Origin: Thecamonas trahens ATCC 50062
Taxonomy: Eukaryota; Protista; Apusomonadida
Length of the DNA stretch: 63,973 bases
NCBI RefSeq assembly: GCF_000142905.1
Contig: NW_013657655.1
Coordinates: 124,001-187,973 of the forward strand
Direction of reading: 5' to 3'
A program made the translations under genes and the position numbers. The notes under the pieces are model-generated. The model worked only from the letters and a program-made list of their open reading frames with translations. It searched no databases and was not told the origin of the DNA. Positions 50,786 through 63,915 of this stretch are shown here, piece after piece (the stretch's first letter is position 1; every line of letters begins with the position of its first letter).

Positions 50786-51481
50786 TTACTGGCTCCGCGC
50801 CGCGAGATAGCCGCGCACCATGGCTTGGTCGGTGAGGTCGACCGGTGTCGCACCGTCGTCATCGACCGCCGCCACATCGAATCCAGCTTCCACAAGCAGC
50901 GAGGTGCAGTAAAAGTCGTCGCTGGCCGTAGCCAAATGCAGCAGCGTCCGTCCACCGCCCACCCGGTGCTGCATCAGCTCGTCGACGCCGCCCTCGCTCG
51001 CGCCCGCTTCCTTCAGCAACGAGTGCAGCAGCGTAGCATCCGACGCCCGGACCGCAGCCTCGACCTTGCGCGAAAGGCAACCAATCGGCAGTGTGGCGTC
51101 TTCGACAGCAGTCTCCGCAGGAACGCTGGGCGCTGCATTCGCAGGCGCGGCCACTGCGCAAGCCGCTGCGCCTGAGTTCGCCCCACTGAGCATCCGTAGC
51201 TGACCGGAGAGCGGAGGCGGAGCCACCTTCCATGCCACCACCCCCAACGTGTTGATCACATGCGGATCGCACCCTGCGCCCAGCACCACCATGGCTGTGG
51301 CCAGCGATCCCGACCGAGCCGCAGCATGCAGCAGAGTACCGCCATCAGCGTCGCGCATGCTGGCCACGCCTGCCTTGCCAACCTCCGCCGTCATGTGAAC
51401 AAGGCTCTCAGCCAGGCGCTCGGCCTCTCCGCTCATAGCCAATGCAAACAGCTCGTCCGACGTAGTCTCACTGTGCGCCAT
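50786..51481 (-). CDS. Ankyrin-repeat protein
   Basis: [16 protein letters not shown] and [14 protein letters not shown]...[10 protein letters not shown]. Confidence 0.8.
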
Positions 51482-51788
51482 GCTATTGTTGAGCGAGGAG
51501 GAGGGGTGTGCAGGGCGTGGGACGGGGCAGGGGGTTGTGAGGAAGGTGAGGGCGGCCTTGGCGCTGATCACGCTGCCGTTGATCAAGCCTCTGATCGATC
51601 AACCCCCCCTGCGCTCCCGGCTCCCCGCCGCCCCCCCCCCCGCCCCCCCCTCCCTGTCCTTAGTAACCCACTTCACCCCACGCCCCCTCCCCCCTTACAC
51701 ACACACACCGGCCCACCCTACCCTCACGCCACTACCAACACTCCGTGGTCACCCACCCTCTTCACATCCAGCTCGCTGCAGGCCCGCC

Positions 51789-54700
51789 ATGCCAGGAGCC
51801 CCGCCGCCGTTCGCGCGCCAGGCTTGGGCCACCGAGACGTCAGAGTTGGGCGACTCGCTGGGCGACACGCTGGGCGACACGCTGGACGACACGTTGGACG
51901 ACACGTTAGGTGACGTGCATGAGGGTTCACCGGAGTATTCCCAACCAGCTATAGGAGAAAGCTCACAGAGCCTGGACTCTGGCTCAGAGTCGGACTTGGG
52001 CGGCTTACCGCTCGCCGACCTCGCACCGCTACCGCCCATTCTGCCGCCGCTGCCGCCCTCGCTGGGCTCAGAGGCAAACACGACAGAACAGGCTGGTGGC
52101 GATGAAGGTACACTCGTTGACTCGACTCATGTCTCGTCGTTTGGCCATCTGCCCTCGTGGGGTTCGCGGGTCTCGCTCAGGTTTGCCACCCGCGCCCGCG
52201 ATGACGACGACGAGCTGCGCCCGCGCGGACCGCCGTACTTTGTCCACCCGAGCAAAGTCTTCTGGCTCCTTGTGGCCTATCTTCAGCTGTTTGTTCTCTC
52301 CACCTCGGTCTCGTCGCCGCTCACCTCGGGTGTCCGCGGCATCGGCGCAGCTCTCGGCTCGGTCGTCCTGCTCCTCGCTCCATGGCCGTTTTCCGACTCA
52401 CCCACGGTGATGGGCGGCGAGCCGACAGGTTGGTCGGTCTTGCTCTCAACAGCACCGCTTGACGTTGACTTGGCTAGCGCGCCGCTGGCTGGGCTTGTCA
52501 CCGGCGTCTTGGTCTGCGGGCTAGCTGCAGGCTGCGCTGGGGCGATCTGGCTGGCAACCGGCCGCGGCTCGCTGGTCTCTGCTGGCGGGCACCATTTGCG
52601 GGCGCTCGTTTGGTGGGTCTGCGTCGGGCTTGTCGGCCCTAGCGTTGCCGCTCTCGCCTCTGGCCGTGGCACTCTACTGGAGATTGCGGCGGCGTGGGTC
52701 TGCCTCTGCTGGCTGGTAGCTGTCGTGCTTCTCCAGTCGGGCGTTGTGCTTGTCCTCCCGCAACGATTCACCAACGGCTACCTGCTTGCACACTGCAAGA
52801 CATGGGCAACACTCCGGGTTGACCTCGACGTGCTCAACACCGAGTCGCTCTACTTTGTACTCTTCTGGCAGCTCGCTGGCTGCTGCCGGGGATTGGCGCC
52901 GGACTCGCCACTTCGCGCGACGAGGCCAAGCTCTTCATGTACATCTGGCTCGCCTTTGAGGTGGCATTCATGGCAGTGCTTGTAGTCAAGCGGCCGTACC
53001 GGTCTACGCTCTTCCTGCACATGAACCTATGGATCGGCGTTGCAACGGCGCTCCAGCTCTGCATCGCCATCCCGTTGGCGAACTCGTCGACTGCCGTCGG
53101 CGCCGAGCCGCCAATCCGGCATATCCTTGTGGCCTGGCTCTCAGTGGCGATTCTGGCGCTGACGTCATCTTGCTTGCTAGGCTACATGCTGTCGTCCAGC
53201 GTGGCACTTGCTTTGGAGCGCAAGACAGCCGTGCTTGCCAACGACGAACCGCTGTTCTGGGCTGCTGCCGGCTCGGGCGAGACCAAGATTCTGCTACAGG
53301 CTGCCAAGTTGACAGCCGCTCGTGCCGCGGCTGCGTCTAAGGCTCGCAAGGCTGCTGGTGCCGAGGTATTTTCTTTTGACAAACTGGAGGGCCTGGTCGG
53401 TGCCCACGATGGGGTCCGTGACGGGCTCCGCGAGTTGGCAATGGCTCTGCAGGTCAATGACTCGGACGGCGTGAGTGCAGGGGCAGCCAAGGCGCTTGCC
53501 GATGCCAAGGCTCTCGACGCGTCGCTGGCCCAAGCCGAGTCTGCGCTCCGCGAGCCGTTCTCATCGCAGCTTGCAGAGCGGCGGGCGCAGCTGGCGCGGG
53601 CGGTTGAGAGTCTTCAGCACGCCCTGGCCGAGTATCTGGCGGCACCTGAGTCGGAAGAGGCGCGCGCCAAGCTGGGCGACGCCTGCACGCTTGTGACGAG
53701 CATGGTCAACGCGGCCATGGATGCAGCCTCGGCAGGGCTCTTCACCTCGTTGCTCGAGGAGGACCTGCCAGCGGCGACGCAGGATGCCAACGTCCAGCTG
53801 CACAACGCAATTATTTCTGCGACGACGGCGACCGACGCCGGCGACATGGCCAGTCTCGCCCGCAACGTGGCCGAGGTTGTGGAGGCAACGTCGACGCTGG
53901 TTGAGGCGGTGTCGTCAGCGCTCAACACCGGCGAGCTTGGCGCCGCCACACGGTCGCAGCTGGTAGCTGTCCGCTCCAAGCTCATTGCCGCACGCGATGC
54001 TGTCTCACAAGCGTTTAACGTCTATGCCGCCAACCCCGATTCGGAGAGAGACCGCGACGCCATGCTCGCTGCGCTACAGGCCGCAGAGCGTGTGCGGGCG
54101 CTGGCGGTGATGGATCTCTCAGCGGCGGCACAGGCTGCACAGGCTGGAAACACCACCATCGACCGCGGTGGGCTCATCTTTGGCAGCCAGTCACAGGTTG
54201 GTCTGGCCGAGGCGGGCACGCCGCGGGCGTTGCCGGCGGCAGCGGGCTCGTCGGCCGCGCTGGCTCTGACGTCACCGCTTCTGGACGCGGCGTCGACGCT
54301 AGTGCTCCGAGCGCATGAGCTGCTCTCGGCAAACGTCAACGAGTATGCACCAACGCTGGAGCAGGGCAAGGCGCTACTGGGCGCGGCGCGGATGTTTTTG
54401 GCTGCTATGGCGCGCCTGGCCGGCGAGACGCCTGTAGACAAGCACCGGGCCGAGTTGGCCAGCCTGCATCGCCAGCTTGAAGGCGTGCTCGACAAGTTTG
54501 GCAAGTGGCTGGTGGCATATGAAGCCGATCCAGTCGACGCCACTGTCCGAGCTGAGCTCGTGCCGCGAGCGGCGGCGATTATCGCTTGCTCGTACTCGGC
54601 GCGGCAGTTGTGCCAGAGCGTGACGCTCGCCCTGCTTGGCCACGACGTCTCGGTGTGCGCTATGGCGCTCGACACCGCCATCCACAACGTGTCTGGCGCC

Positions 54701-57700
54701 CTTTCGGGCGCTGTGTCGAGCGCGTCCTCCGACGCCGCACCGGGATCGTTGGCCTTTGGCACCCCTGCAGACGTGCTCGGGCTCAACGCGCTATGTGTTG
54801 ATCTTGTGGCACAGGCCGAGGACTTTGACAGCCACGCGCAGGAGCTTGAGCGCGCGCTCCCCAACCCTGCACTGCTGCAGGTGGTGTACCAGGCGCGCGC
54901 GTCGTTCATGTCGGCGTTTGTGGCGGTCGCTACTGGGCTTGACCAACTGCGACGCGAGGTCGGCGAGGGCTCGGCGTCGGCGGCGCCGATTGTGACTGTG
55001 GTCTCGCCGCGCGACGGCTCTCCGGTTGCTTCGCTAACTCGAAACCTGTACGAGCTCCAACTCGCCCGCGACCGGCTTTTGCTCAGCCTCTCCGACGTCT
55101 ACCGACCGGTCCTTGACACTGGCTTCTCGCTTGCCGACGCCGAGCTCACCGACTCGCTGACGTTGCTGCGGCAGGCGCTTGCGCCGATGCTCCCGGTCTC
55201 GATGTCTGGCGGTGGCAAGCCGAGCAGAGCTGCGGCCAGTCAGGGCGACCAGGGGCAGAGCGGCGAGTCGACAGAGTCGGCGGTATCGCTAGCGCGGCCG
55301 ACGTTTGTGGCGGTGGCACGGCTTCGTGGCGTGACCCGCAACCTGCAGTCGACAACCAACGACGAGGTCATTGTGGGCCAGCTCGACGCCGGACGGCGCG
55401 AGCTCGAGTTCTCGACCGACACACTTGGTGGGGTTCTGGAGCGGACTCCTGCGCCGCCGCTCACTGGTGTCGACGCGTCGACCATTCTGAGCGACCGCGA
55501 TCAGCGCGACGTGACGGCTGCCCTCGACGGGGTGGCTGCAGCGCGGGTGGCGCTCTTTGCCATCGGTTTCAAGGTCGAGGCGTCGTATCTGGCGGCCGAA
55601 GCCGAGGCGCGGGCCAAGTCGCTTCAGAGTGCACTCGCTGCTGCTACCGACGTCTCGCTCACGGATGTGGAGGCGTTTGTGGTGGCCGAGCAGTCAGTGG
55701 AGGAGGCGAACGAGCTGTTCTCCGACGCACTGCAGAGCCTTGCCCATCGGCGGACCGACTCGAGCATGCGCGAGGTGCTGGCTGCGGCTGAGCTTGTTGA
55801 CGACGGCGTTGCCGAGCTCCACGAGCTGAGAGTGAGATACTGCAACGACCCGGTGCTTGGCGAGCACGAGCTGAGCGAGCCACTGCGACAGCTGCTGGTA
55901 CGGATCGAGGGCGATGTCGAGCTGCTGCTGAGCAAGGTGGTGGCGTACAACGACGAGGCGCTGCGGCAGCTGGCGGAGCTGCTGGAGGCGACATCGGGCC
56001 AATCCGTCTCGCTCAACGCTTCGTTTGCGCGGGCCAACTTTGCAGATGTGCGCAAGACGGTGGCACTTTCGCAGGACTTGTTGCGAACCATCAAGGTGTT
56101 GGAGAGCATGCTGCAGTCTGCGCTGTCGTCGCTCGCGCTCCCTGCGCTACGGGATGTGCTGAACGGGCTTGCCAACGAGGTCGCCTTTACCAAGGCCTCG
56201 ATCAACCAAGGGGTGGCGGCGTACGAAGCCAACCCGACCGACTCGGGGGCACGGGCGACGCTGCGTGCGGCGCAGGCCTCGCTCTCGGGTATCCGGCGGT
56301 CAGTGCTGGAGGTGACCGCTGTAGCCGCGGTTTTGGTTGACCTGACTCGTGAGACCGGGACGGCGTCCAAGCTGGCATCGTCGTTGGACTCTGCGCCGCG
56401 GCGCAAGTTCTTCTCGGCAGTTGTTGGGGTGGGCAAGGTCTCTGTCGACCACATCGAGATCGCGGGCATCATGGGCTTTTCGTCAAAGCGGCTGGCGTTG
56501 GCGTCACCGACGCTGCGTGCGTCCTCGGGTGCGTCACCGCGTTCTGTGGTCAAGACGACCGCGTCAGCCATTTCGCGGCTGCGAAGCACGGCCCGTGGCG
56601 TGGCCAAGTCGGACACGTACTCGGCTGAGGACCAGGACCTTGTCGAGGCGGCTAAAGCGCTGTCGTCGGCCATGCGTGGGCTCACAGGTGCATACAAGGC
56701 CTTCACTACTGCTGTGGATGCCAAGTACAACGGGCCCACCACCGGACGGCCTGCGACGACCAGCCGCTCCGGCGAGACTGCTGCCGCCGGTTCGGGTGAC
56801 GAGCAGGTGACAGATGCGCTTACGATGTCGACACAGAAGCTCATTGATGCCGGGCTGGCAATGGTCGAGGCAATGAGCGGCGTGACGGCGATGCACGCCG
56901 GTGACTCGGCGGGCTCGGCCACGATTGCGGCGCTGATGGTGTCGCAGCAGCCAGTACTGGCGCCCAAGGCGGCCGAGACGCGGACGCTTCTGGAGCGGGT
57001 GGTGGTGCATGTCCGCAAATGTGCAGAGCTTGCGAAGCGGCTGCGGAAGAGCAACCAGGTCGAGTCGTTCAAGGCGTGGGCCGCAGTGGCGATGGATGCC
57101 GGCGGCGATCTTGCGGGGTGCTGACGAGGTTGCCGGCAGGTACAACCTCAAGTTTTTCAGGGAGTACGGGAGCAAGTGTGCTAGCGGACTCCGTGAGGCT
57201 GCCAGCAACCTGGAGGGTGTACTGGCGTCGTCTGGCAAACCGCCGCTCATCGGCGGAGTGGTGAAGCGGCTCCTGAACGCGCTGGGCGCACTGGGCGCGG
57301 CTGCTGTTGATGCGCACTACTTTGTGGCGCAAGCCGGTGTGGTGGTCGACATGGCGCATCTGGGCGTTGTGGCATCGTCGTCTCGGTACCTTGAGGGTGT
57401 GTCGCAAGCACGGTCGGCGCTGTTTGAGGGAGTGGCCACCGCGGCAAAGAAAACGGCGTCGACGGTGATGCTTGCACCGTCGTCAACGGTGACGGCAGCC
57501 GAGGCCAAGTCGCTGGGTGCCGACGTTGCGCGAGCACGATCGCAGCTGTCGCTGGCAATGCGGACGCTGACAAGGATCCTGACGTCGGCAAATGAGCGGG
57601 CGAGTGTCGAGGCGCATGCGTCGCGGGCATCGGCGGGCCTGCGTGACCTTGCCAACGAGGCTGTCAAGCACGGCAACAACCTCCGCACGCTCCGAGCCCT

Positions 57701-60700
57701 ACCGTTTGGCAACTTGCCGGCATCATTGGAAGCGGATGCGTCGCCGCTGGCGGTGGGCCTTGCCGAGAATGAGTCTGCCCTCGGTGAAGCATCGCGGCGT
57801 GCGACAGCCGAGGTAACGCGGCTGCTGCAGGACCAGCGCGAGGTGGTGCAGCGTGCGGCGAACGAGGGCGTGCATTCGATTGACGGGCGAAGCGGCGCAC
57901 TTGACGAGGGCCTCTCGCCGCGAACCGCGCTGGGTGCGGCATTTGCCGAAATGAGGTCTGCTGGCGGGTCAAACGACATGTCGTCGCTGGCCGAGCTGCT
58001 GTACGAGGGTCTTGTGGAGGGCGAGATGGAGCTGAGCGAGGCGTTGGAGCGGATGAGCGACTTTGACAACATGCATGCGGTGGCACTTGCAGGCGTTGAC
58101 GCGATGGACGCCACAAGCTCGGTGCTCAACGTCATGCGGCGGCTGGTGCTCTTTGCCTTTGATCCGATGGTGCTCGACGACCTCGGCGATGCACAGAGCT
58201 CGCTCGACACTGCGTTTGCAGCGTTTTCGAGTTCGCTTGCAGCTGTTCGCGAGTCGCCAAACGACCGATCACTCATTCCAAAGCTTCGGCGGACGATGAA
58301 CGGGTTGGCCGACGCCAAGGACGTCGTGATGATGGTGGCGTCGCTGCCGGCCAACATTGCCGACATTGTGCGCGGATCTGCTCTCGCGTCGGCGCTAGCG
58401 GGCGGGGCGCTCTTGACCGAGGCAAAGCGGTCGGTGTTTGTCACGCTTGCGGAGCTGGCCAATGGCATATCGCATCTGCTGCGGTCGCTGGACGCGCCGA
58501 ACGAGCGGTTCACAAACCGGGCACGGCGGCTTCTTGCGCTCAACGACAACCTGCTGGTGCGGGTCCAAGCAGTGGACGCCGAGGAGCACGCGTTGCTCGA
58601 GGCACGGCGAAAGCGGCGCGAACACGCGCTACAGGTGGCGGCGGACGCCGGGTTTGACAAAGACTTGTCGGGCGTGACGGCCCACGCAAGCGCTGGCGAG
58701 TTGATGAGCGAGTCAATGGTGGAAATGGCCGCGGCCGAGCTAGGGACCGACGAGGCGAGCGGTCATCGGCTGCTTGCCCCGCTGATTGTTTCGGTGTTTG
58801 AACACGCACGGGCTGTGGTGGTCGAGGCGCAGGCGGCGCAGGCGGCATCGAGCGATGCGGACGACGCGTTTGATGTGCTCAACCAGCACGGGTACAACTT
58901 TACTCGTGCGATTCGGACGATGGCGTCATTGACGACAGCCACAGGACCGACAGCTGGCTCGGATGCTGAGTCGCGGACGATGGCGCGAGCGCTGGCGGAT
59001 GCGTACCGGCGGATCGAGGCGGCACTCCCGCGGCTTCGCGCCGACGGCAAGGCAACGACTGAGACCAAGACTGCGGCGTACGACTGTCTGGATGCGCTTC
59101 GGAGCGTGCGGCACATTGTTGGTGAGCTCACCGAGTCGACGGAGAACGGGGTGTTGGCAACACGGTTGGCTGGCTCACTCGGGGACATTGACTCGGCGAC
59201 GCGACAAGTTGAGCTTGCGGTGAAGAATGCACAGTATGCGCCATCGTCGCGTAAGGTTCACTCGCTGCTGGATCTTGCGGCCGACGCTGCATGCGATGCA
59301 GCTGATGCGGCGATTCCGCTGGGTGTTTGCGCCGCGGCGCACGCCGAGATGGAGCTAGCCATTCTCTCTCTGACCGAGGCGGCGTCGGCGGCGACGTCGC
59401 GGCCGCTGGCAGGCTTCCTCGAGGAGGTTCGCGCGCTGGCCAAGTGCGGCGCAGGCCTGATGGTGTCGGCGACGAGCGGAATCGAAGGCACGCTTGGCAA
59501 CGAGCTGCGGCGGCTGGATGAGGGCTTGGCACGGCTGGACGAGTATCAAGTGGCGCTTGAGCGCGATCGTGTAGCTCGGCAAGAGGCCGAACAGGCGTCT
59601 GCGCTCTCGCGGCATGTGCATGCCGCTGTGGGTGAGCTCATTCGCGTGGCCCATGGGGTAGTCGCGGCGCCACGAGAGTTGGATGTGGCGCTTGCGCTGG
59701 AGAGCCAGGTGGTGCGGTTTGTGGGCGAGGTTGACTCTGTGGTGCACGTGACGTCGGAATGGGACGACGCGGCGGGCTCCCGGTCTGTGGTGGGTGTGGG
59801 TGTGGGTGGCGGCGGGCGGCATGCGGCGGTGCCGGGCTCGCGGATCAACACAGGCGGACAGGCGAGCGGGCGTGACGGCGGTGACGACGATGATTTCGAG
59901 GTGCTCGCGTGGCCGGACGAGGTCGCCAAGGAGCTCTCGGATCTGCTGGACGACCTCGAGGTCGGGTGTGAGCAGATCTTGCACGGAGTCCGCAGCCGGC
60001 AGCCTGCAAGGGCGCGGGCTGGGTGCGGAGGCGTGGAGGAGACCGGAACAGAGCTGGAGTCACTTCTGCACTCGATGGAGGAGCTGGCTGACGACATTGT
60101 GGTCAAGGACCGGCTGTTTATGGCGCGCAAACGAACGGCGGACGGGCTTGACCGGCTGGCACTTGCGCGCAAGTACTATGCGCAGCAGGTGGATAGCCAG
60201 TCGCGGCGGCGGCTGTTTGACGCAGCCAAGTCGATGCTGCTTGCGCGGCGGTACGCGCTAGAGGCGACGTCGCGCAAGCCGCGGCTCCGGCTGCCAGCAA
60301 AGTACAACGTGGGACGACAGGACGGACGGGCAGGACGGTCGTCTCGGAAACGTCGGCGACTTCCGGCCCCGCCTCGGTCAGTTGGCCCGACAGCGAGTGC
60401 TGGGCTGCGTCCGTACTCGCCGTGGGAGTCCTCGCGTGAACAGTCGCGAGCGCGGAGGACGAGCCCTCGGCGGGTGCGACAGCCTGCGCAACTCGGGGAG
60501 AGCGAGGCTGTACGCGAGGCGCGCGAGACACTCGAGAAGTACGAGCAGCGCATCAAGGAGGAGCGCGCGGCTGCGCGTGCGACAAGGAAACGGCTACGGG
60601 AGAGCCGGGCGACCGGTGTGTGCAGTAGTGAGAGCGAGAGCGGCAGCAGCGACGTGTACGTGCAGCACAACGGCGAGCAGGACCGGGTTGGACGAAGCGT

Positions 60701-61725
60701 TGGTCGCGAGCGGCAGCGGCAGGGTACCGGCCGGCGACGCGGCGAGCGGCGGGTCTCCTGGCAGCGCGGGCAGCCGAAGAGTGGCCGTGGCAAGCTGCTG
60801 GCAGATCTGGAAGCGCTGCCGCCGATTGCGCAGCGACCCGAGGGCCCGGGAGCGCTTGATGAGTCAACTGGGCTGCGCAGTCTGCGGATGGCGTCAGTTT
60901 CTGTGGGCACGCTACACAAGCTGAAGGACTTTAGGGATGTGTTTACCGAGGTGACGACGGAGTTGTTCCTCGGCGGAGTCGGGTGCGCACAGGATGAAGA
61001 GCTGCTCCGCAAACACTCGATCAGCCACATTATCAACGTGGCCGGAGGGGTGGCGCCCAACTTTTCCCGGACCAGTTTGTGTACAAGCGAATTTCGCTGC
61101 AGAACACGCCGTCGGAAGACATCTACTCGCTGCTGTACGACGTGGTGGAATTTATCCAGGACGCAGTGGAGAGCGGCGGGCGAGTGTTTGTGCACTGCAT
61201 GCAGGGCTCGTCGCGATCGGCATCGCTGGTGCTGGCGTACCTGATGTGGCGCGACGCACTGTCGTACGACGACGCATATCGGTATGTGCGTTATCTGCGG
61301 GCAGTGTGCTCGCCGAATCCCGGGTTCGAGGCGCAGCTGCGCGAGTGGGCGAACCACATGCTGATGGGCGGCGAGCGCGGTGGGGTGCAGCTTGCGGCGC
61401 ACGAGCGCAACCGACTGTACTCGATCATGCCACACAACCGAACGACCGGAGTGTGATTGTGGGCAAGGTGGTGAAGCACGAGCTGATGCGGTCGTCGATG
61501 GGGCCGCGCAACTGCTTTGTCCTTGTGGCACCCGAGGCCGGCGTGGTGTTCCTCTGGCTCGGACTGCGCGTACCGGACCGGTACGTCCGCAAGGCGCACC
61601 ATGTTGTGGCGCAGCTGCAACACTACGAGGGCGCGCCGGCTCGAGTCGTCGAGGTCGAGCAGGGCGATGAGAGTCCAGAGTTCTGGGAGGCTTTGATGGC
61701 GAACCAAGAGTCGTATGCTGTGTAA
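51789..61725 (+). CDS. Giant (~3,300 aa) polytopic membrane protein with talin/vinculin-like helical bundles, dual-specificity phosphatase and gelsolin-like domain
   Basis: Five consecutive overlapping ORFs (51480-52985, 52937-57124, 57009-61244, 61079-61456, 60994-61725) join at frameshifts near 52870, 57116, 61063 and 61439. About 9 TM helices, Ala/Leu-rich amphipathic helices, HCMQGSSRS, VFLWLG...VEQGDESPEFWEAL. Confidence 0.75.
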
Positions 61726-61815
61726 ATGCAAGCTATAGTCGCAGTGACGCGATTGGCGGCGGTGGTTTGACCGCTGATCGATGATCGCCGTTTGCGGCGG
61801 CGAGGAGATGGTGAG

Positions 61816-63053
61816 TTACAGCTCGAGCTCGATGCCCGAGCCCGAGGTGGGCGACGTGACGGCGAGCGAAGTGTCGAGAGTGGTGAGGGTGTGGTCGCGA
61901 ATCTCTGTCCAGGAACGGATGCGGTTGAGCTCGAGGCGAAGAGTGGCGACCTCTTGGTTGACAGCGACCGACTCTTGGAGGGTCTTTTCGAGGCGGGCGT
62001 TGAGCAGGGCTTCCTCCTTGCGCAGATTTGCTAGATGCTTGCCCTGGTGTGCGTCGCGGGCCTTTGCGATGGCGTTGCGTGTTGCGGCGCGGAGGGCGTC
62101 AGCTTCGCGGGTGTACTGGTCGTCAAACGACTTTGTGATCTCCTGCGAGCGCTTGAGGCAGCGAGCCTCGACCTTTGCCAGCTCTGCGGCGGTGCGGGCG
62201 TTGCGGGCCTTTTTCTGCGAGAGGCCACGGGCGAGCTGGCGCTTTGCAAGGGCAAGCTCGTGGAGGGTGGCGTTGAGCGAGTCGCGCTCCTTAGCCAGCT
62301 TTGTCAGCGAGCGCTCGATGGCAGCCGAAGTCAGGTGCAGTTCCTTGTTTTTGGCACGTACCGAGGTGAGCCGGCGCTTGGAGAGCGAGGTCTGGTGGGC
62401 AATGACCTTTGCGCGCGGCGAGAGGCGGTTGATGGGCCGCGAGTTTGTCTTGGCGGCCGACTGGGCAGCGAGCGCCGAGGCGCCAGCAGTGGACATCCGA
62501 GTCGGCGCCACAATGCGCCACACCTCATCGTCCTTGCCTGTCTGTTCAGCACGGAGCTCCTTGAGCTCTGCACGCAGCGCTTGGTTCTCGGCGAGGATGA
62601 CCCGCAGCTTTGCCCGCACCGCCTTGTCTTTCTCGCGCACCGTGTCGAGGCGGGTGTTTTTGGCCTGCACCGCTGACGCCACAGGCAGCTCCGAGAGCGA
62701 GAAGGTCGACGTGTTCATCCTCCGATGGGCAGCATCGCGGACAGAGGTCATCGACATCGAGTGGGTCAGCTCTGCCGCAGTCGAGCCCGTCACTGCCGCC
62801 ACGTACTCGAGCAGCCGCGCGGTCTCTGCCCGCTTGCGTTCGGCCTCGGTGTCAGCCTCGCGCTTCCGTTTGCGGGCAATGTATGCTCTATGGCAGTGGA
62901 TGGGTGAGTGTGTGTGTGGGGGAGGGTGGTGGTGGTGGTGTGTGTGTGTGTGTGGGGGGGAGGGTGTGTCGGGAGGTGTGTGTCGGGAGGTGTGTGTCGG
63001 GAGGTGTGGGAGGTGTGGTGCGGTCGGTCGACGGTTGGTCGTTTGGTTGACAT
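61816..63053 (-). CDS. Hypothetical coiled-coil protein; probable intron 62888-63021
   Basis: Long heptad-rich ORF (LAENQALRAELKEL, LAKERDSLNATLHEL, VNQEVATLRLELNRI); 5' exon is tentative. Confidence 0.6.
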
Positions 63054-63089
63054 GGGTCGTTCGCTTGGATGCGGCAGGAGTGGCACAGG

Positions 63090-63915
63090 TCACGGATCCG
63101 AGCCGGAGAGGATGTAGGTCATGTAGACATCGTCGCGGATGGCGTGGATGACGGCGGCTGAAGAGCGGAGGAGACAGATGATGGCGTGGTCGGGGGCAAT
63201 CTGCATGCAGTGCAGGAAGCGGGCAAGGTGGCCGATGTTGAGCTTGAGGGCGACAGAGGTATCGTGCGGGAGGTCGGCGGGATCCTGCGAGCTGCCCTCA
63301 ACCGCATCAGCTGGAAGGGGGAGCTCGAGCGAGGAGTAGTCAGTCGAGACGGTGACCATGTCTGTGCGGATCTGCAGCGAGAGCGAGTTGCCGTCGGGGA
63401 GGTTGTCCCGGTGACGACGACGTCGGTCGAGAGATGGCGCATGCGGTCGAGCACGTTTTTGATGTGGGCAAGGCTCGGTAGCATGAGCGCAACATCAGCC
63501 TCCGCCAGCTGCGGCTCGGCATGGTCGGCGAGGCGGGCAAGCGGCAGGATCTCGACAGGCACGTCCTGGGTGACGTTGAGCATGTTGCCGGCGCCGACCA
63601 CCATGCCGCGGCACACGAGCGAGAGATGCGGCTCGCCGCCGCGCTTGGTCAGCTTGATGACAAGCGAGCTTGCGGTCATGCCTGTCTTGAGCGCACGTAC
63701 AAGGTCCGTCAGCGACAGGTGCATGCCGATGGTGTTGTTGGAGAGCGACTCGAGGCGGAAGGTCTCGCCAAACACCGCGTTTGTCTGCACGCCCGACCAC
63801 ACGGCAATGCCCTCGCTGCCTGCCGCACTCTCCGGCTTGGCCGAGACCAGCACCCGCTCCGGGGTCAACTGGACAATCCCGGTTCCATGCGTCCGCTCCA
63901 CCGCCGTCAGAAGCT
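63090..63915 (-). CDS. HUS1: Checkpoint clamp (9-1-1) subunit HUS1; 5' exon outside window
   Basis: VWSGVQTNAVFG.TFRLES..NNTIGMHLSL.DLVRALK, IKLTKR..EPHL, VTQDVPV, LPSLAHIKNVLDRMRHLS, MTYIL. Frameshift in the run at 63396-63399; acceptor at 63916. Confidence 0.9.

What the first reader, a model, noticed from the sequence alone, without database searches (positions are those of the whole stretch)
51789..61725. Candidate single-chain mechanotransducer: TRP/Pkd2-like membrane domain + talin/vinculin-like rod + MKP-type phosphatase + gelsolin domain
Seen after joining four frameshifts: a disordered N-terminus, then ~9 TM helices (FWLLVAYLQLF ... YFVLFWQL ... IWLAFEVAFMAVLVVKRPY ... HMNLWIG). Next come ~2,300 aa of Ala/Leu amphipathic helices with recurring turns YLAAPESEEARAKL, YAANPDSERDRDAML, YEADPVDATVRAEL, YEANPTDSGARATL and RESPNDRSLIPKL, then a basic linker, a DSP (HCMQGSSRS) and a gelsolin-like repeat. 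Knowledge: such NP.D...R..L turns typify talin-rod and vinculin bundles that unfold under force; the Q...RPY...N TM pattern resembles fungal FLC/Pkd2 TRP-like domains; DSP+gelsolin is the module of plant MKP1. Inference: membrane anchor or channel, force-sensitive spring, and an actin-associated signalling head in one protein, potentially an integrin-independent adhesion sensor. I know no described protein with this combination.
Basis: partly seen in the sequence, partly recalled or inferred. Interest (0 to 1): 0.88.

Follow-up and report, generated by a model that had tools for sequence, protein, structure and literature searches.

The report
Giant membrane-anchored phosphatase with helical-bundle rod
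One very large gene of the marine flagellate Thecamonas trahens encodes a membrane-embedded protein with a long chain of talin/vinculin-like helical bundles that ends in a phosphatase and a gelsolin domain; no other protein in the databases searched has this build, and its role as a force sensor is untested.

Summary
The window is Thecamonas trahens ATCC 50062, and the stretch is one gene, already in GenBank as XP_013757514.1 ("dual specificity protein phosphatase 19", 3250 aa, unstudied).

**Frame breaks.** Three of the four are homopolymer under-calls in the assembly. Contigs from other runs, including an unrelated 2025 estuary metagenome, carry the missing bases at 57114-57119, 61061 and 61437. 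The first break (52886-91) could not be checked with reads. GenBank bridges all four with 35-68-nt pseudo-introns. The true protein is about 3313 aa.

**Domains, in order:**
- An acidic disordered N-terminus.
- 8-9 transmembrane helices. PF06011 (TRP/Flc/Pkd2) is the best Pfam and ESM match but far below threshold.
- About 2300 aa of all-helical sequence. In the confident parts of two AlphaFold samples it folds as tandem ~130-aa four-helix bundles. The best solved matches are alpha-catenin, talin, vinculin and FAT-type bundles. There is no sequence homology to them.
- An Arg-rich linker.
- An MKP-like DSP domain with intact Cys-X5-Arg but Asn at the general-acid Asp.
- One gelsolin domain.

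No relative of the rod or of a giant DSP-gelsolin protein was found elsewhere. The architecture is real and unusual. The mechanotransducer function remains speculation.

The parts
51789..52256 (+). Start codon and acidic, Ser/Gly/Pro/Asp-rich N-terminal region (~156 aa) with no domain match
   Evidence: Translation. It matches the start of P0001. No Pfam hit.
52257..53179 (+). Polytopic membrane domain with 8-9 hydrophobic helices. The last three (52925-53179) carry the KRPYRS loop and a weak PF06011 (TRP) match
   Evidence: Hydropathy. Pfam PF06011 E 0.03, 13.6 bits, profile positions 314-405. ESM features top hit is a PF06011 cluster, 0.95. hhalign to the genome's paralogues gives P 0.007. 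Not above shuffles.
52886..52891 (.). Frame break 1 (frame 0 to frame 2) in a CCGGGG run, not verified by reads. GenBank splices out 52857-52924 here, which removes a predicted TM helix
   Evidence: Both frames are open across it. Coding-type GC3 continues (and direct reading). The positive-inside pattern favours keeping the helix (inference).
53180..60146 (+). About 2300-aa Ala/Leu-rich all-helical region. It is predicted as tandem ~130-aa four-helix bundles where the models are confident, with a short Gly/Asp-rich break near 59520-59640
   Evidence: AF2 models m2489248fb734 and mcda533c37401. Foldseek. VIA-align wide. No Pfam hit. No internal BLAST repeat. No relative among 1.84 billion representatives except itself.
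53633..53674 (+). Turn motif YLAAPESEEARAKL, at the H3-H4 turn of predicted bundle 1. Further copies lie at 54023-54064, 54518-54559, 56222-56263 and (RESPNDRSLIPKL) 58248-58286
   Evidence: Regex and shuffles. Placed by me from the AF2 helix list: model residues 114, 244 and 409 fall in the gaps between helices H89-116/H121-154, H217-246/H251-288 and H382-411/H416-448.
57114..57119 (.). Frame break 2: two bases are missing from the assembly in a G-rich run
   Evidence: read-laying table 4 shows insertions in X1, X3 and X6 contigs.
60147..60965 (+). Arg-rich (about 20% R), Ser/Glu/Gln-rich linker, probably disordered
   Evidence: Composition and translation.
60966..61354 (+). Dual-specificity phosphatase domain (MKP-like). 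P-loop HCMQGSSRS at 61193-61219, and Asn codon 61103-61105 in place of the general-acid Asp
   Evidence: PF00782 E 6.6e-25. Aligned to DUSP1 and DUSP10 at E 1e-15, with ISLQN against IPVED and LPATD. 6 of 7 aligned paralogues in the genome keep Asp. No read variant at this site.
61061..61061 (.). Frame break 3: one T is missing from a T run inside the DSP domain
   Evidence: +T in X1 and X2 contigs.
61437..61437 (.). Frame break 4: one C is missing between the DSP and gelsolin domains
   Evidence: +C in X1, X2 and X3 contigs.
61471..61686 (+). Single gelsolin-type domain at the extreme C-terminus. The stop codon is at 61723-61725
   Evidence: PF00626 scores 19.9-21.3 bits against a cut-off of 21. 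All 20 PDB sequence hits are gelsolin, adseverin, villin or CapG, best E 1.2e-4. 29 of 30 ESM-feature hits are gelsolin clusters.

Best explanation
This is one intact gene of Thecamonas trahens of about 3313 codons. The reference assembly broke it by under-calling homopolymers. It encodes a giant polytopic membrane protein.

Its cytoplasmic tail is a long chain of four-helix bundles. That is the same structural class as talin rod, vinculin and alpha-catenin domains, but it is an orphan in sequence. A basic disordered linker follows. The tail ends in an MKP-like dual-specificity phosphatase domain that keeps the Cys-X5-Arg nucleophile loop but has Asn for the general-acid Asp. One gelsolin-type domain closes the protein.

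The most likely role (inference) is a membrane-tethered cortical scaffold. It would hold a low-turnover or substrate-trapping phospho-protein-binding module and a gelsolin-type module far from the membrane anchor. The partners of the gelsolin module could be actin, Ca2+ or lipid; this is untested. The bundles would serve as a spacer and docking platform.

Shown: the gene continuity, the domain identities and the predicted bundle fold. Inferred: topology, partners and any force sensitivity.
For: **Gene continuity**
- Reads restore three of the four frames.
- Codon-position GC is uniform.
- A GenBank model spans the same start and stop.

**Membrane domain**
- 8-9 hydrophobic helices, with K/R-rich alternate loops.

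**Rod**
- Two AF2 samples are all-helical, with 23-48-residue helices and short turns. Confident four-helix bundles occur at model residues 25-154, 157-282 and 316-445, and at 405-549 in the second sample.
- Foldseek top hits are alpha-catenin, talin and vinculin, at E 1e-5 and 5e-3.
- An unbiased VIA-align search puts p130Cas/FAT, talin R3/R6, TLNRD1, vinculin tail and alpha-catenin M at Z 15-17.5, rmsd about 2 A over 120-130 residues.
- A conserved turn motif sits at H3-H4 of successive bundles.

**C-terminal module**
- DSP.
- Gelsolin.
- This is the only DSP+gelsolin pairing in this genome.
Against: - There is no RNA evidence for a single transcript: no RNA run was found.
- Break 1 is unverified.
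- Both AF2 models are single-sequence with low mean confidence (pLDDT 59.7 and 53.8). Only about 40% and 20% of residues reach pLDDT 70 or more.
- Four-helix bundles are a generic fold. Designed bundles reach Z 14 and BRIL fusions appear.
- There are no orthologues, so conservation cannot be used.
- Function is inferred from domain content only.
Confidence: 0.6

Rival explanations
1. This is a single-chain mechanotransducer. A TRP/Pkd2-like stretch-sensitive channel or anchor is joined to actin through a force-unfolding talin-like rod. The phosphatase and gelsolin domains form the actin-coupled signalling output, acting as an integrin-independent adhesion or tension sensor.
For: - The layout parallels talin: membrane-binding end, bundle rod, actin-family end.
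- The bundle fold is supported.
- PF06011 is the best, though sub-threshold, family for the last three TM helices.
- The PF06011 member Pkd2 of S. pombe is reported as stretch-activated and Ca2+-permeable (abstract of PMC9727806, seen).
- The gelsolin domain is real.
Against: - PF06011 membership fails the Pfam cut-off (13.6 against 28.5 bits).
- The locus is absent from the 73 PF06011 matches in its own genome.
- A paralogue profile does no better than shuffles.
- There is no sequence link to talin or vinculin.
- There are no data on actin binding by a lone gelsolin domain, on force, or on localisation.
- T. trahens has vinculin-family genes of its own, so no gap needs filling.
- The phosphatase lacks its general acid.
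Confidence: 0.15
2. The long helical region is not a chain of discrete bundles. It is a fast-evolving, low-complexity Ala/Leu-rich spacer, partly disordered or loosely coiled, that merely tethers a phosphatase to a membrane.
For: - More than half of both AF2 models is below pLDDT 60.
- There is no internal repeat by BLAST.
- There is no homologue anywhere.
- Ala makes up 14-24% of the region.
Against: - Helix lengths and turns are regular.
- Four segments fold confidently as four-helix bundles at rmsd about 2 A to solved ones.
- A turn motif recurs at the same place in successive bundles, far above chance.
Confidence: 0.15
3. The locus holds two or more separate genes (a membrane protein and a phosphatase), or a decaying pseudogene, fused only on paper.
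For: - There are four frame breaks in the assembly.
- There are no RNA data.
- The GenBank model relies on implausibly short introns.
Against: - Three breaks vanish in independent contigs.
- After correction there is no stop in about 9.9 kb.
- Codon statistics are uniform across the joins.
- Near-identical sequence, with only scattered substitutions (11 listed over 5.8 kb in X1), is present in environmental metagenomes.
Confidence: 0.07

Closest known systems
Plant MAP kinase phosphatase 1 (AtMKP1/TaMKP1): DSP domain followed by a gelsolin repeat region
   Same: Both have a DSP catalytic domain followed directly by gelsolin-type sequence. The plant architecture is stated in PMC11182583. The catalytic domain is MKP-like by sequence, with best PDB matches DUSP1, 10, 16 and 4.
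   Different: - The plant proteins are soluble and about 700-1000 aa (own knowledge). They have no membrane domain and no helical rod.
- Here the module is the last ~300 aa of a ~3300-aa membrane protein.
- The general-acid Asp is Asn here.
- Common descent of the fusion was not tested.
Talin rod / vinculin / alpha-catenin / TLNRD1 / FAT-type four-helix bundles
   Same: The predicted fold is tandem up-down four-helix bundles of about 130 aa with 25-35-residue helices. These families top both Foldseek lists and the unbiased VIA-align list. Aromatic-x-x-(D/N/A)-P helix turns recall the W..DP turns of vinculin repeats (own knowledge). One AYQAAPDD turn is present in T. trahens' own vinculin homologue.
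   Different: - There is no detectable sequence similarity to these families: Pfam, PDB phmmer, and BLAST/phmmer against the genome's own vinculin-family ORFs.
- There is no FERM head, no I/LWEQ/THATCH and no vinculin head-tail organisation.
- It is anchored by TM helices instead.
PF06011 TRP-like membrane proteins (fungal Flc1-3, S. pombe Pkd2)
   Same: Both have a similar number of TM helices. The weak best-family match covers the last three helices at the right profile positions, 314-405. The ESM-feature top hit is a PF06011 cluster. A basic RPY loop follows a TM helix, as in the genome's PF06011 paralogues.
   Different: - It is far below the family threshold.
- There is no signal peptide or N-terminal ectodomain. 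The genome's true PF06011 members carry Ephrin_rec_like or GPS ectodomains.
- There is a huge C-terminal extension instead.
GenBank XP_013757514.1 / KNC49723.1 'dual specificity protein phosphatase 19' of T. trahens ATCC 50062
   Same: It is the same locus, start and stop. It is 100% identical across the two large segments and 94-99% in the three short segments next to the frame breaks.
   Different: - The model is 3250 aa because it skips 35-68 nt at each frame break as pseudo-introns.
- The first of these deletes a predicted TM helix.
- The automatic name reflects only the DSP domain.
- No paper held Thecamonas, gelsolin and phosphatase together.

Membership tests
Dual-specificity phosphatase (PF00782, DSPc) | Profile match above the Pfam gathering score | tested here: met
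   87.9 bits against a cut-off of 33.5, E 6.6e-25 on P0001 residues 3023-3139.
Dual-specificity phosphatase (PF00782, DSPc) | HCxxGxxR(S/T) nucleophile/phosphate-binding loop | tested here: met
   HCMQGSSRS at 61193-61219 aligns to the P-loops of DUSP1 and DUSP10.
Dual-specificity phosphatase (PF00782, DSPc) | General-acid Asp about 30 residues upstream of the Cys | tested here: not met
   Asn (ISLQN) aligns with the Asp of DUSP1 (PVED) and DUSP10 (PATD). 6 of 7 aligned paralogues keep Asp. No read variant at the site.
Classical MKP (DUSP1/6/10 type) | N-terminal rhodanese/CH2 MAPK-binding domain | tested here: not met
   No rhodanese or other Pfam match upstream of the DSP domain.
Plant MKP1-type phosphatase | DSP domain followed by a gelsolin repeat | tested here: met
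   DSP lies at 60966-61354 and gelsolin at 61471-61686. The plant architecture is described in PMC11182583.
Plant MKP1-type phosphatase | Orthology (closest relatives are MKP1 proteins) | not tested
   The length window of the search for homologous proteins and the frame breaks left no reference that could reach 700-1000-aa proteins. The one search run covered only 1787-5687-aa candidates.
Gelsolin domain (PF00626) | Profile match above the gathering score | tested here: inconclusive
   19.9 bits, 14.5 bits on P0001 and 21.3 bits in the own-genome scan, against a cut-off of 21.
Gelsolin domain (PF00626) | Family-specific similarity by independent methods | tested here: met
   All 20 PDB sequence hits are gelsolin-family, best E 1.2e-4. 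29 of 30 ESM-feature hits are gelsolin clusters, recognition 2550.
Talin / vinculin / alpha-catenin | Sequence-profile membership (PF01044 Vinculin; talin families) | tested here: not met
   No Pfam match at E 0.1 or better. A PF01044 scan of the genome hits other loci, not this one. No PDB sequence hit. No similarity to the genome's vinculin-family ORFs.
Talin / vinculin / alpha-catenin | Tandem four/five-helix bundle fold | tested here: met
   This holds at the level of single-sequence AF2 models only. Foldseek E is 1e-5 and 5e-3. VIA Z is 15-17.5 at rmsd about 2 A per bundle. Designed bundles score Z 14, so the fold is not diagnostic of the family.
Talin | FERM head and C-terminal I/LWEQ actin-binding domain | tested here: not met
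   No FERM, Talin_middle, VBS or I_LWEQ match in Pfam scans of all pieces and of P0001.
PF06011 TRP (Flc/Pkd2) | Profile match above the gathering score | tested here: not met
   13.6 bits against 28.5, E 0.03, on the last three TM helices only. The locus is not among 73 own-genome matches. The paralogue profile does no better than shuffles.
PF06011 TRP (Flc/Pkd2) | Signal peptide plus N-terminal ectodomain before the TM core | tested here: not met
   The N-terminus is acidic and disordered with no domain. The genome's bona fide members carry Ephrin_rec_like or GPS ectodomains.
PF06011 TRP (Flc/Pkd2) | Ion-channel or stretch-activated activity | not testable with these tools
   This needs electrophysiology or reconstitution.

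The most novel reading that the evidence does not exclude
This is a talin-analogous membrane-to-actin tether built on a polytopic, possibly TRP-like (PF06011) channel domain instead of a FERM/integrin link. About 16 force-unfoldable four-helix bundles would couple membrane or cortical tension to a substrate-trapping MKP-like phosphatase and a gelsolin-type actin module. It would be an integrin-independent mechanosensor in a close relative of animals and fungi.
Probability: 0.12. Interest if true: 0.8.

Novelty: new variant of a known kind. Interest (0 to 1): 0.45.

Why it matters
Thecamonas is a key outgroup for the origin of the animal adhesion and cytoskeletal toolkit. It has vinculin-family genes of its own. 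A second protein that strings talin/vinculin-class bundles between a membrane domain and an actin-family domain, with a phosphatase attached, would show that this design arose more than once or was re-used outside integrin adhesions.

It also extends the DSP-gelsolin pairing, so far described for plant MKP1, to a very different context. It offers a natural Asp-to-Asn "trap" variant of an MKP-like domain.

Practically, the GenBank model of this gene is wrong at four places. At least three of its introns are artefacts of 1-2-base assembly errors. This probably affects many other models in this assembly.

Tried and rejected
**Led nowhere**
- Trypanosomatid origin was my first guess, from the GC content and CA-rich spacers. 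Searches rejected it.
- Internal repeats by BLAST self-comparison: none at E 1 or better.
- Paralogues of the rod and of either half of the TM domain in the genome: none.
- Exhaustive HMMER of 1200 rod residues against 1.84 billion representatives found only the protein itself, plus a Bartonella YadA stalk at E 2.6e-5, taken as compositional noise.
- A search for giant relatives of the DSP-gelsolin end found none among 1787-5687-aa candidates.
- PDB sequence search with the rod gave one chance hit, E 0.65.
- BLAST and phmmer of the rod against T. trahens vinculin-family ORFs gave nothing significant.
- A profile built from 28 PF06011-like paralogues, run against the TM domain, placed shuffles above the real sequence. 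hhalign gave P 0.007, probability 5.6%.

**Could not be done**
- Two exact-pattern scans of JGI metagenome contigs, meant to resolve break 1, found nothing.
- The ESM Atlas structure library was not available.
- No paper held Thecamonas, gelsolin and phosphatase together; a search for T. trahens with TRP, Flc or Pkd2 listed nothing on this protein.

**Handling of the breaks**
- I submitted no joined (read-through) protein to any search or fold tool.
- Pieces were sent by reference, and the GenBank model P0001 was used where a whole protein was needed.
- An X-joined version was used only in local scripts.
- For this reason the whole TM domain could not be folded.
Full report
**Identity of the locus**

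The window is contig C25 (436,284 bases) of a 28.7-Mb genome in 131 contigs. I queried 1200 rod residues against 1.84 billion representative proteins with HMMER. The search returned one real hit, P0001, 3250 aa. The cluster look-up names it KNC49723.1 / XP_013757514.1, "dual specificity protein phosphatase 19", Thecamonas trahens ATCC 50062, on a contig of the same length, 436,284. So the window is the public T. trahens assembly, and the finding is an already annotated but unstudied gene. No paper held Thecamonas, gelsolin and phosphatase together, and a second search on the TRP/Flc/Pkd2 family listed nothing on this protein.

**The frame breaks**

On the + strand the coding frame changes four times: 0, 2, 0, 2, 1 (mod 3). 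Each change lies in a short homopolymer:
- ...CCGGGG... at 52886-91
- ...GCGGGGTGC... at 57113-21
- ...ACTTTTCCC... at 61060-68
- ...AACCGAAC... at 61434-41

I laid Logan contigs of four runs on 56000-61800. The runs were:
- X1, a 2025 estuary metagenome
- X2 and X3, 2010 runs labelled with the organism, probably the source sample
- X6, a 2020 run

The only indels reported are these:
- +G or +T and +G at 57114-57119 (net +2)
- +T behind 61061
- +C behind 61437

These are exactly the shifts needed to keep one frame. Substitutions were rare: 11 are listed over 5.8 kb for X1.

Three of the four breaks are therefore assembly under-calls, and the ORF is continuous from 52889 to the stop at 61723-61725.

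The GenBank model reaches the same end by skipping 68, 37, 35 and a few nt at the four sites. At least three of those introns are artefacts.

Two exact-pattern scans of metagenome contigs found nothing. I rate it a fourth under-call at about 85%, for four reasons:
- The other three pseudo-introns are false.
- Both frames are open across the site.
- Coding-type third-position GC continues through it.
- The skipped 68 nt encode a hydrophobic helix (FVLFWQLAGCC-GIGAGLA) whose removal would reverse the positive-inside pattern of the later loops (inference).

With five bases restored the protein is about 3313 aa. Codon-position GC (about 0.70/0.50/0.75) is uniform over all segments. That argues against a paper fusion of separate genes. 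No RNA run was found, so a single transcript is not shown.

**N-terminus and membrane domain**

Residues 1-156 are acidic and Ser/Gly/Pro-rich, with no domain. Nine hydrophobic peaks follow. One is weak and one spans break 1. K/R-rich loops alternate (RGxxxxR, RFTNGYLLAHCK, KRPYRS). This fits an 8-TM N-in/C-in topology or a 9-TM N-out/C-in topology. Either one puts the tail in the cytoplasm (inference).

The evidence on the TRP/Pkd2 idea is mixed.
- The Pfam scan of the long pieces found nothing.
- The 144-aa piece holding the last three helices gives PF06011 (TRP) as the best of 24,736 families. It scores only 13.6 bits against a cut-off of 28.5 (E 0.03), at profile positions 314-405.
- The ESM-feature search of the same piece puts a PF06011 cluster first (0.95, 207 of 256 features). 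Its recognition value of 2100 is below the 2300 mark.
- T. trahens has a large PF06011-like set: 73 six-frame matches, 14 above cut-off. This locus is not among them.
- The members I inspected carry Ephrin_rec_like or GPS ectodomains N-terminal to the TM core, unlike this protein.
- A profile built from 28 of them aligns the RPY loop (hhalign P 0.007). It scores no better on the real sequence than on shuffles.

My verdict is that this may be a very divergent PF06011-like core, at roughly even odds. It is not a demonstrable member.

**The rod**

From about residue 470 to 2750 the sequence is Ala/Leu-rich. It has no Pfam match and no BLAST-detectable internal repeat. It has no paralogue and no homologue elsewhere.

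The turn motif [YFLW]..[ANDES]P.[DES]...[RK]..[LM] occurs four times against 0.015 expected. A fifth, looser copy is RESPNDRSLIPKL. An alignment of the five copies shows a shared upstream helix pattern.

I folded two 700-aa samples without an alignment.

*Sample 1 (P0001 480-1179).* Mean pLDDT is 59.7, with blocks of 70-92 over residues 30-280 and 330-440. It consists of 23-38-residue helices joined by 3-6-residue turns.

*Sample 2 (P0001 1950-2649).* Mean pLDDT is 53.8, and the model is confident only over residues 405-530. It is again helix-turn-helix throughout.

Foldseek against the PDB gave these results:
- For sample 1 the top ranks are almost all alpha-catenin, talin and vinculin (E 1e-5 to 1e-3). 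Per-domain TM-scores reach 0.40-0.46.
- For sample 2 the top ranks are talin R7R8, TLNRD1, alpha-catenin and vinculin head (E 5e-3 and weaker). BRIL fusions appear further down.

The Foldseek-independent VIA-align search of 48,161 chains aligns model residues 25-154, 152-282 and 316-445 as single four-helix bundles. The matches are p130Cas FAT-like (Z 17.5), talin R3/R6, TLNRD1, vinculin tail and FAK/Pyk2 FAT, at rmsd 1.6-3 A over 119-130 residues. Residues 30-277 align as a double bundle to the alpha-catenin M fragment and to sponge vinculin.

Designed four-helix bundles reach Z 14-14.7 in the same list. The tool's own note says helical models often reach Z 13-14 by arrangement alone.

My conclusions on the rod:
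- It is not a plain coiled coil.
- Its confident parts are predicted as tandem ~130-aa four-helix bundles, the structural class of talin, vinculin, alpha-catenin and FAT. By length this would make about 16 bundles (inference).
- Comparing the motif positions with the helix list, I place the recurring motif at the H3-H4 turn of successive bundles (model positions 114, 244, 409). So there is a real, highly diverged repeat.
- Homology to the adhesion families is not shown. PDB sequence search, a PF01044 scan of the genome and direct comparison with the genome's two vinculin-family ORFs all failed.
- One AYQAAPDD turn in the T. trahens vinculin homologue is an anecdote.

**The C-terminal module**

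After an Arg-rich (20% R) linker comes a DSP domain (PF00782, E 6.6e-25). Its closest solved relatives are the MKPs DUSP1, 10, 16 and 4 (E 1e-15), then STYX, slingshot and DUSP19.

The loop HCMQGSSRS is intact. In the alignments to DUSP1 and DUSP10, the residue I recognise as their general-acid Asp (own knowledge) is paired with Asn here: ISLQN against PVED and PATD. Six of seven aligned DSP paralogues in the same genome keep Asp. No run shows a variant at the site.

From established PTP/DSP enzymology (own knowledge), Asp-to-Asn or Asp-to-Ala variants lose orders of magnitude in kcat and act as substrate traps. So the domain is probably a slow enzyme or a phospho-substrate binder (inference).

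The last 95 residues are a single gelsolin-type domain:
- Pfam scores 19.9-21.3 bits around the cut-off of 21.
- All 20 PDB sequence hits are gelsolin-family.
- 29 of 30 ESM hits are gelsolin clusters.

Neither scan of the genome found another DSP match next to a gelsolin match. No giant protein elsewhere shares this end. DSP followed by gelsolin is the layout of plant MKP1 (PMC11182583). Common origin could not be tested with the references available.

**How it most likely works**

Shown:
- one gene
- a membrane domain
- a predicted bundle rod
- a linker
- a DSP domain with Asn at the acid position
- a gelsolin domain

Inferred: a cytoplasmic tail tens of nanometres long. It would present a phospho-protein-binding or slow-phosphatase module and a gelsolin-type module at a distance from a polytopic anchor, with the bundles as spacer and docking surface. 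In short, it is a membrane-tethered cortical scaffold.

Nothing here tests channel activity, actin binding or force response. I give it about 0.12-0.15.

**Novelty and score**

The parts are known kinds. The gene is already in GenBank under a misleading automatic name and with a faulty model. The combination was found nowhere else in the databases searched, and it is confined to one species so far. I rate it a new variant of a known kind, with interest 0.45.

Noticed in passing
G000 genome-wide; e.g. L002 (C43:257285-261091), L003 (C51), L005 (C28), L009 (C9): T. trahens carries a large set of PF06011 (TRP/Flc/Pkd2-like) membrane domains: 73 six-frame matches, 14 above the Pfam cut-off. Many lie in ORFs of 1000-2700 aa. 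The inspected ones have Cys-rich Ephrin_rec_like, GPS-motif or DUF7630 ectodomains N-terminal to the TM core. That looks like a lineage-specific receptor family.
   Followed up: partly
window 52857-52924, 57092-57128, 61038-61072, ~61427-61428: The GenBank model XP_013757514.1 bridges 1-2-base assembly errors with 35-68-nt pseudo-introns. Three are shown false by reads. Other models in this assembly probably share the problem, since other notes on this genome also mention genes hidden by frameshifts.
   Followed up: partly
L032+L033 (G000:C56:153560-161602): The T. trahens vinculin homologue is a 1984-aa open frame. Its two PF01044 halves (profile 5-485 and 537-848) are separated by about 800 aa of extra sequence. 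That sequence contains an AYQAAPDD turn like the motif of the rod studied here.
   Followed up: partly
window 56000-61800: Near-identical sequence occurs in estuary and marine metagenome runs of several studies. X1 holds 84% of the sampled words, and only 11 substitutions are listed over the 5.8 kb laid; X7 and X10 also hold it. So T. trahens or a very close strain is present in those environments.
   Followed up: no
L038 (G000:C25:251715-252381): Another DSP paralogue on the same contig has His (IGLTH) at the general-acid position, so departures from Asp occur more than once in this genome's DSP set.
   Followed up: no
window 50786-51586 (-) and 61816-63093 (-): The flanking genes on the opposite strand are an ankyrin-repeat-like ORF upstream and a coiled-coil-like ORF downstream. 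CA/CT-rich spacers give His/Thr/Pro runs in translation.
   Followed up: no
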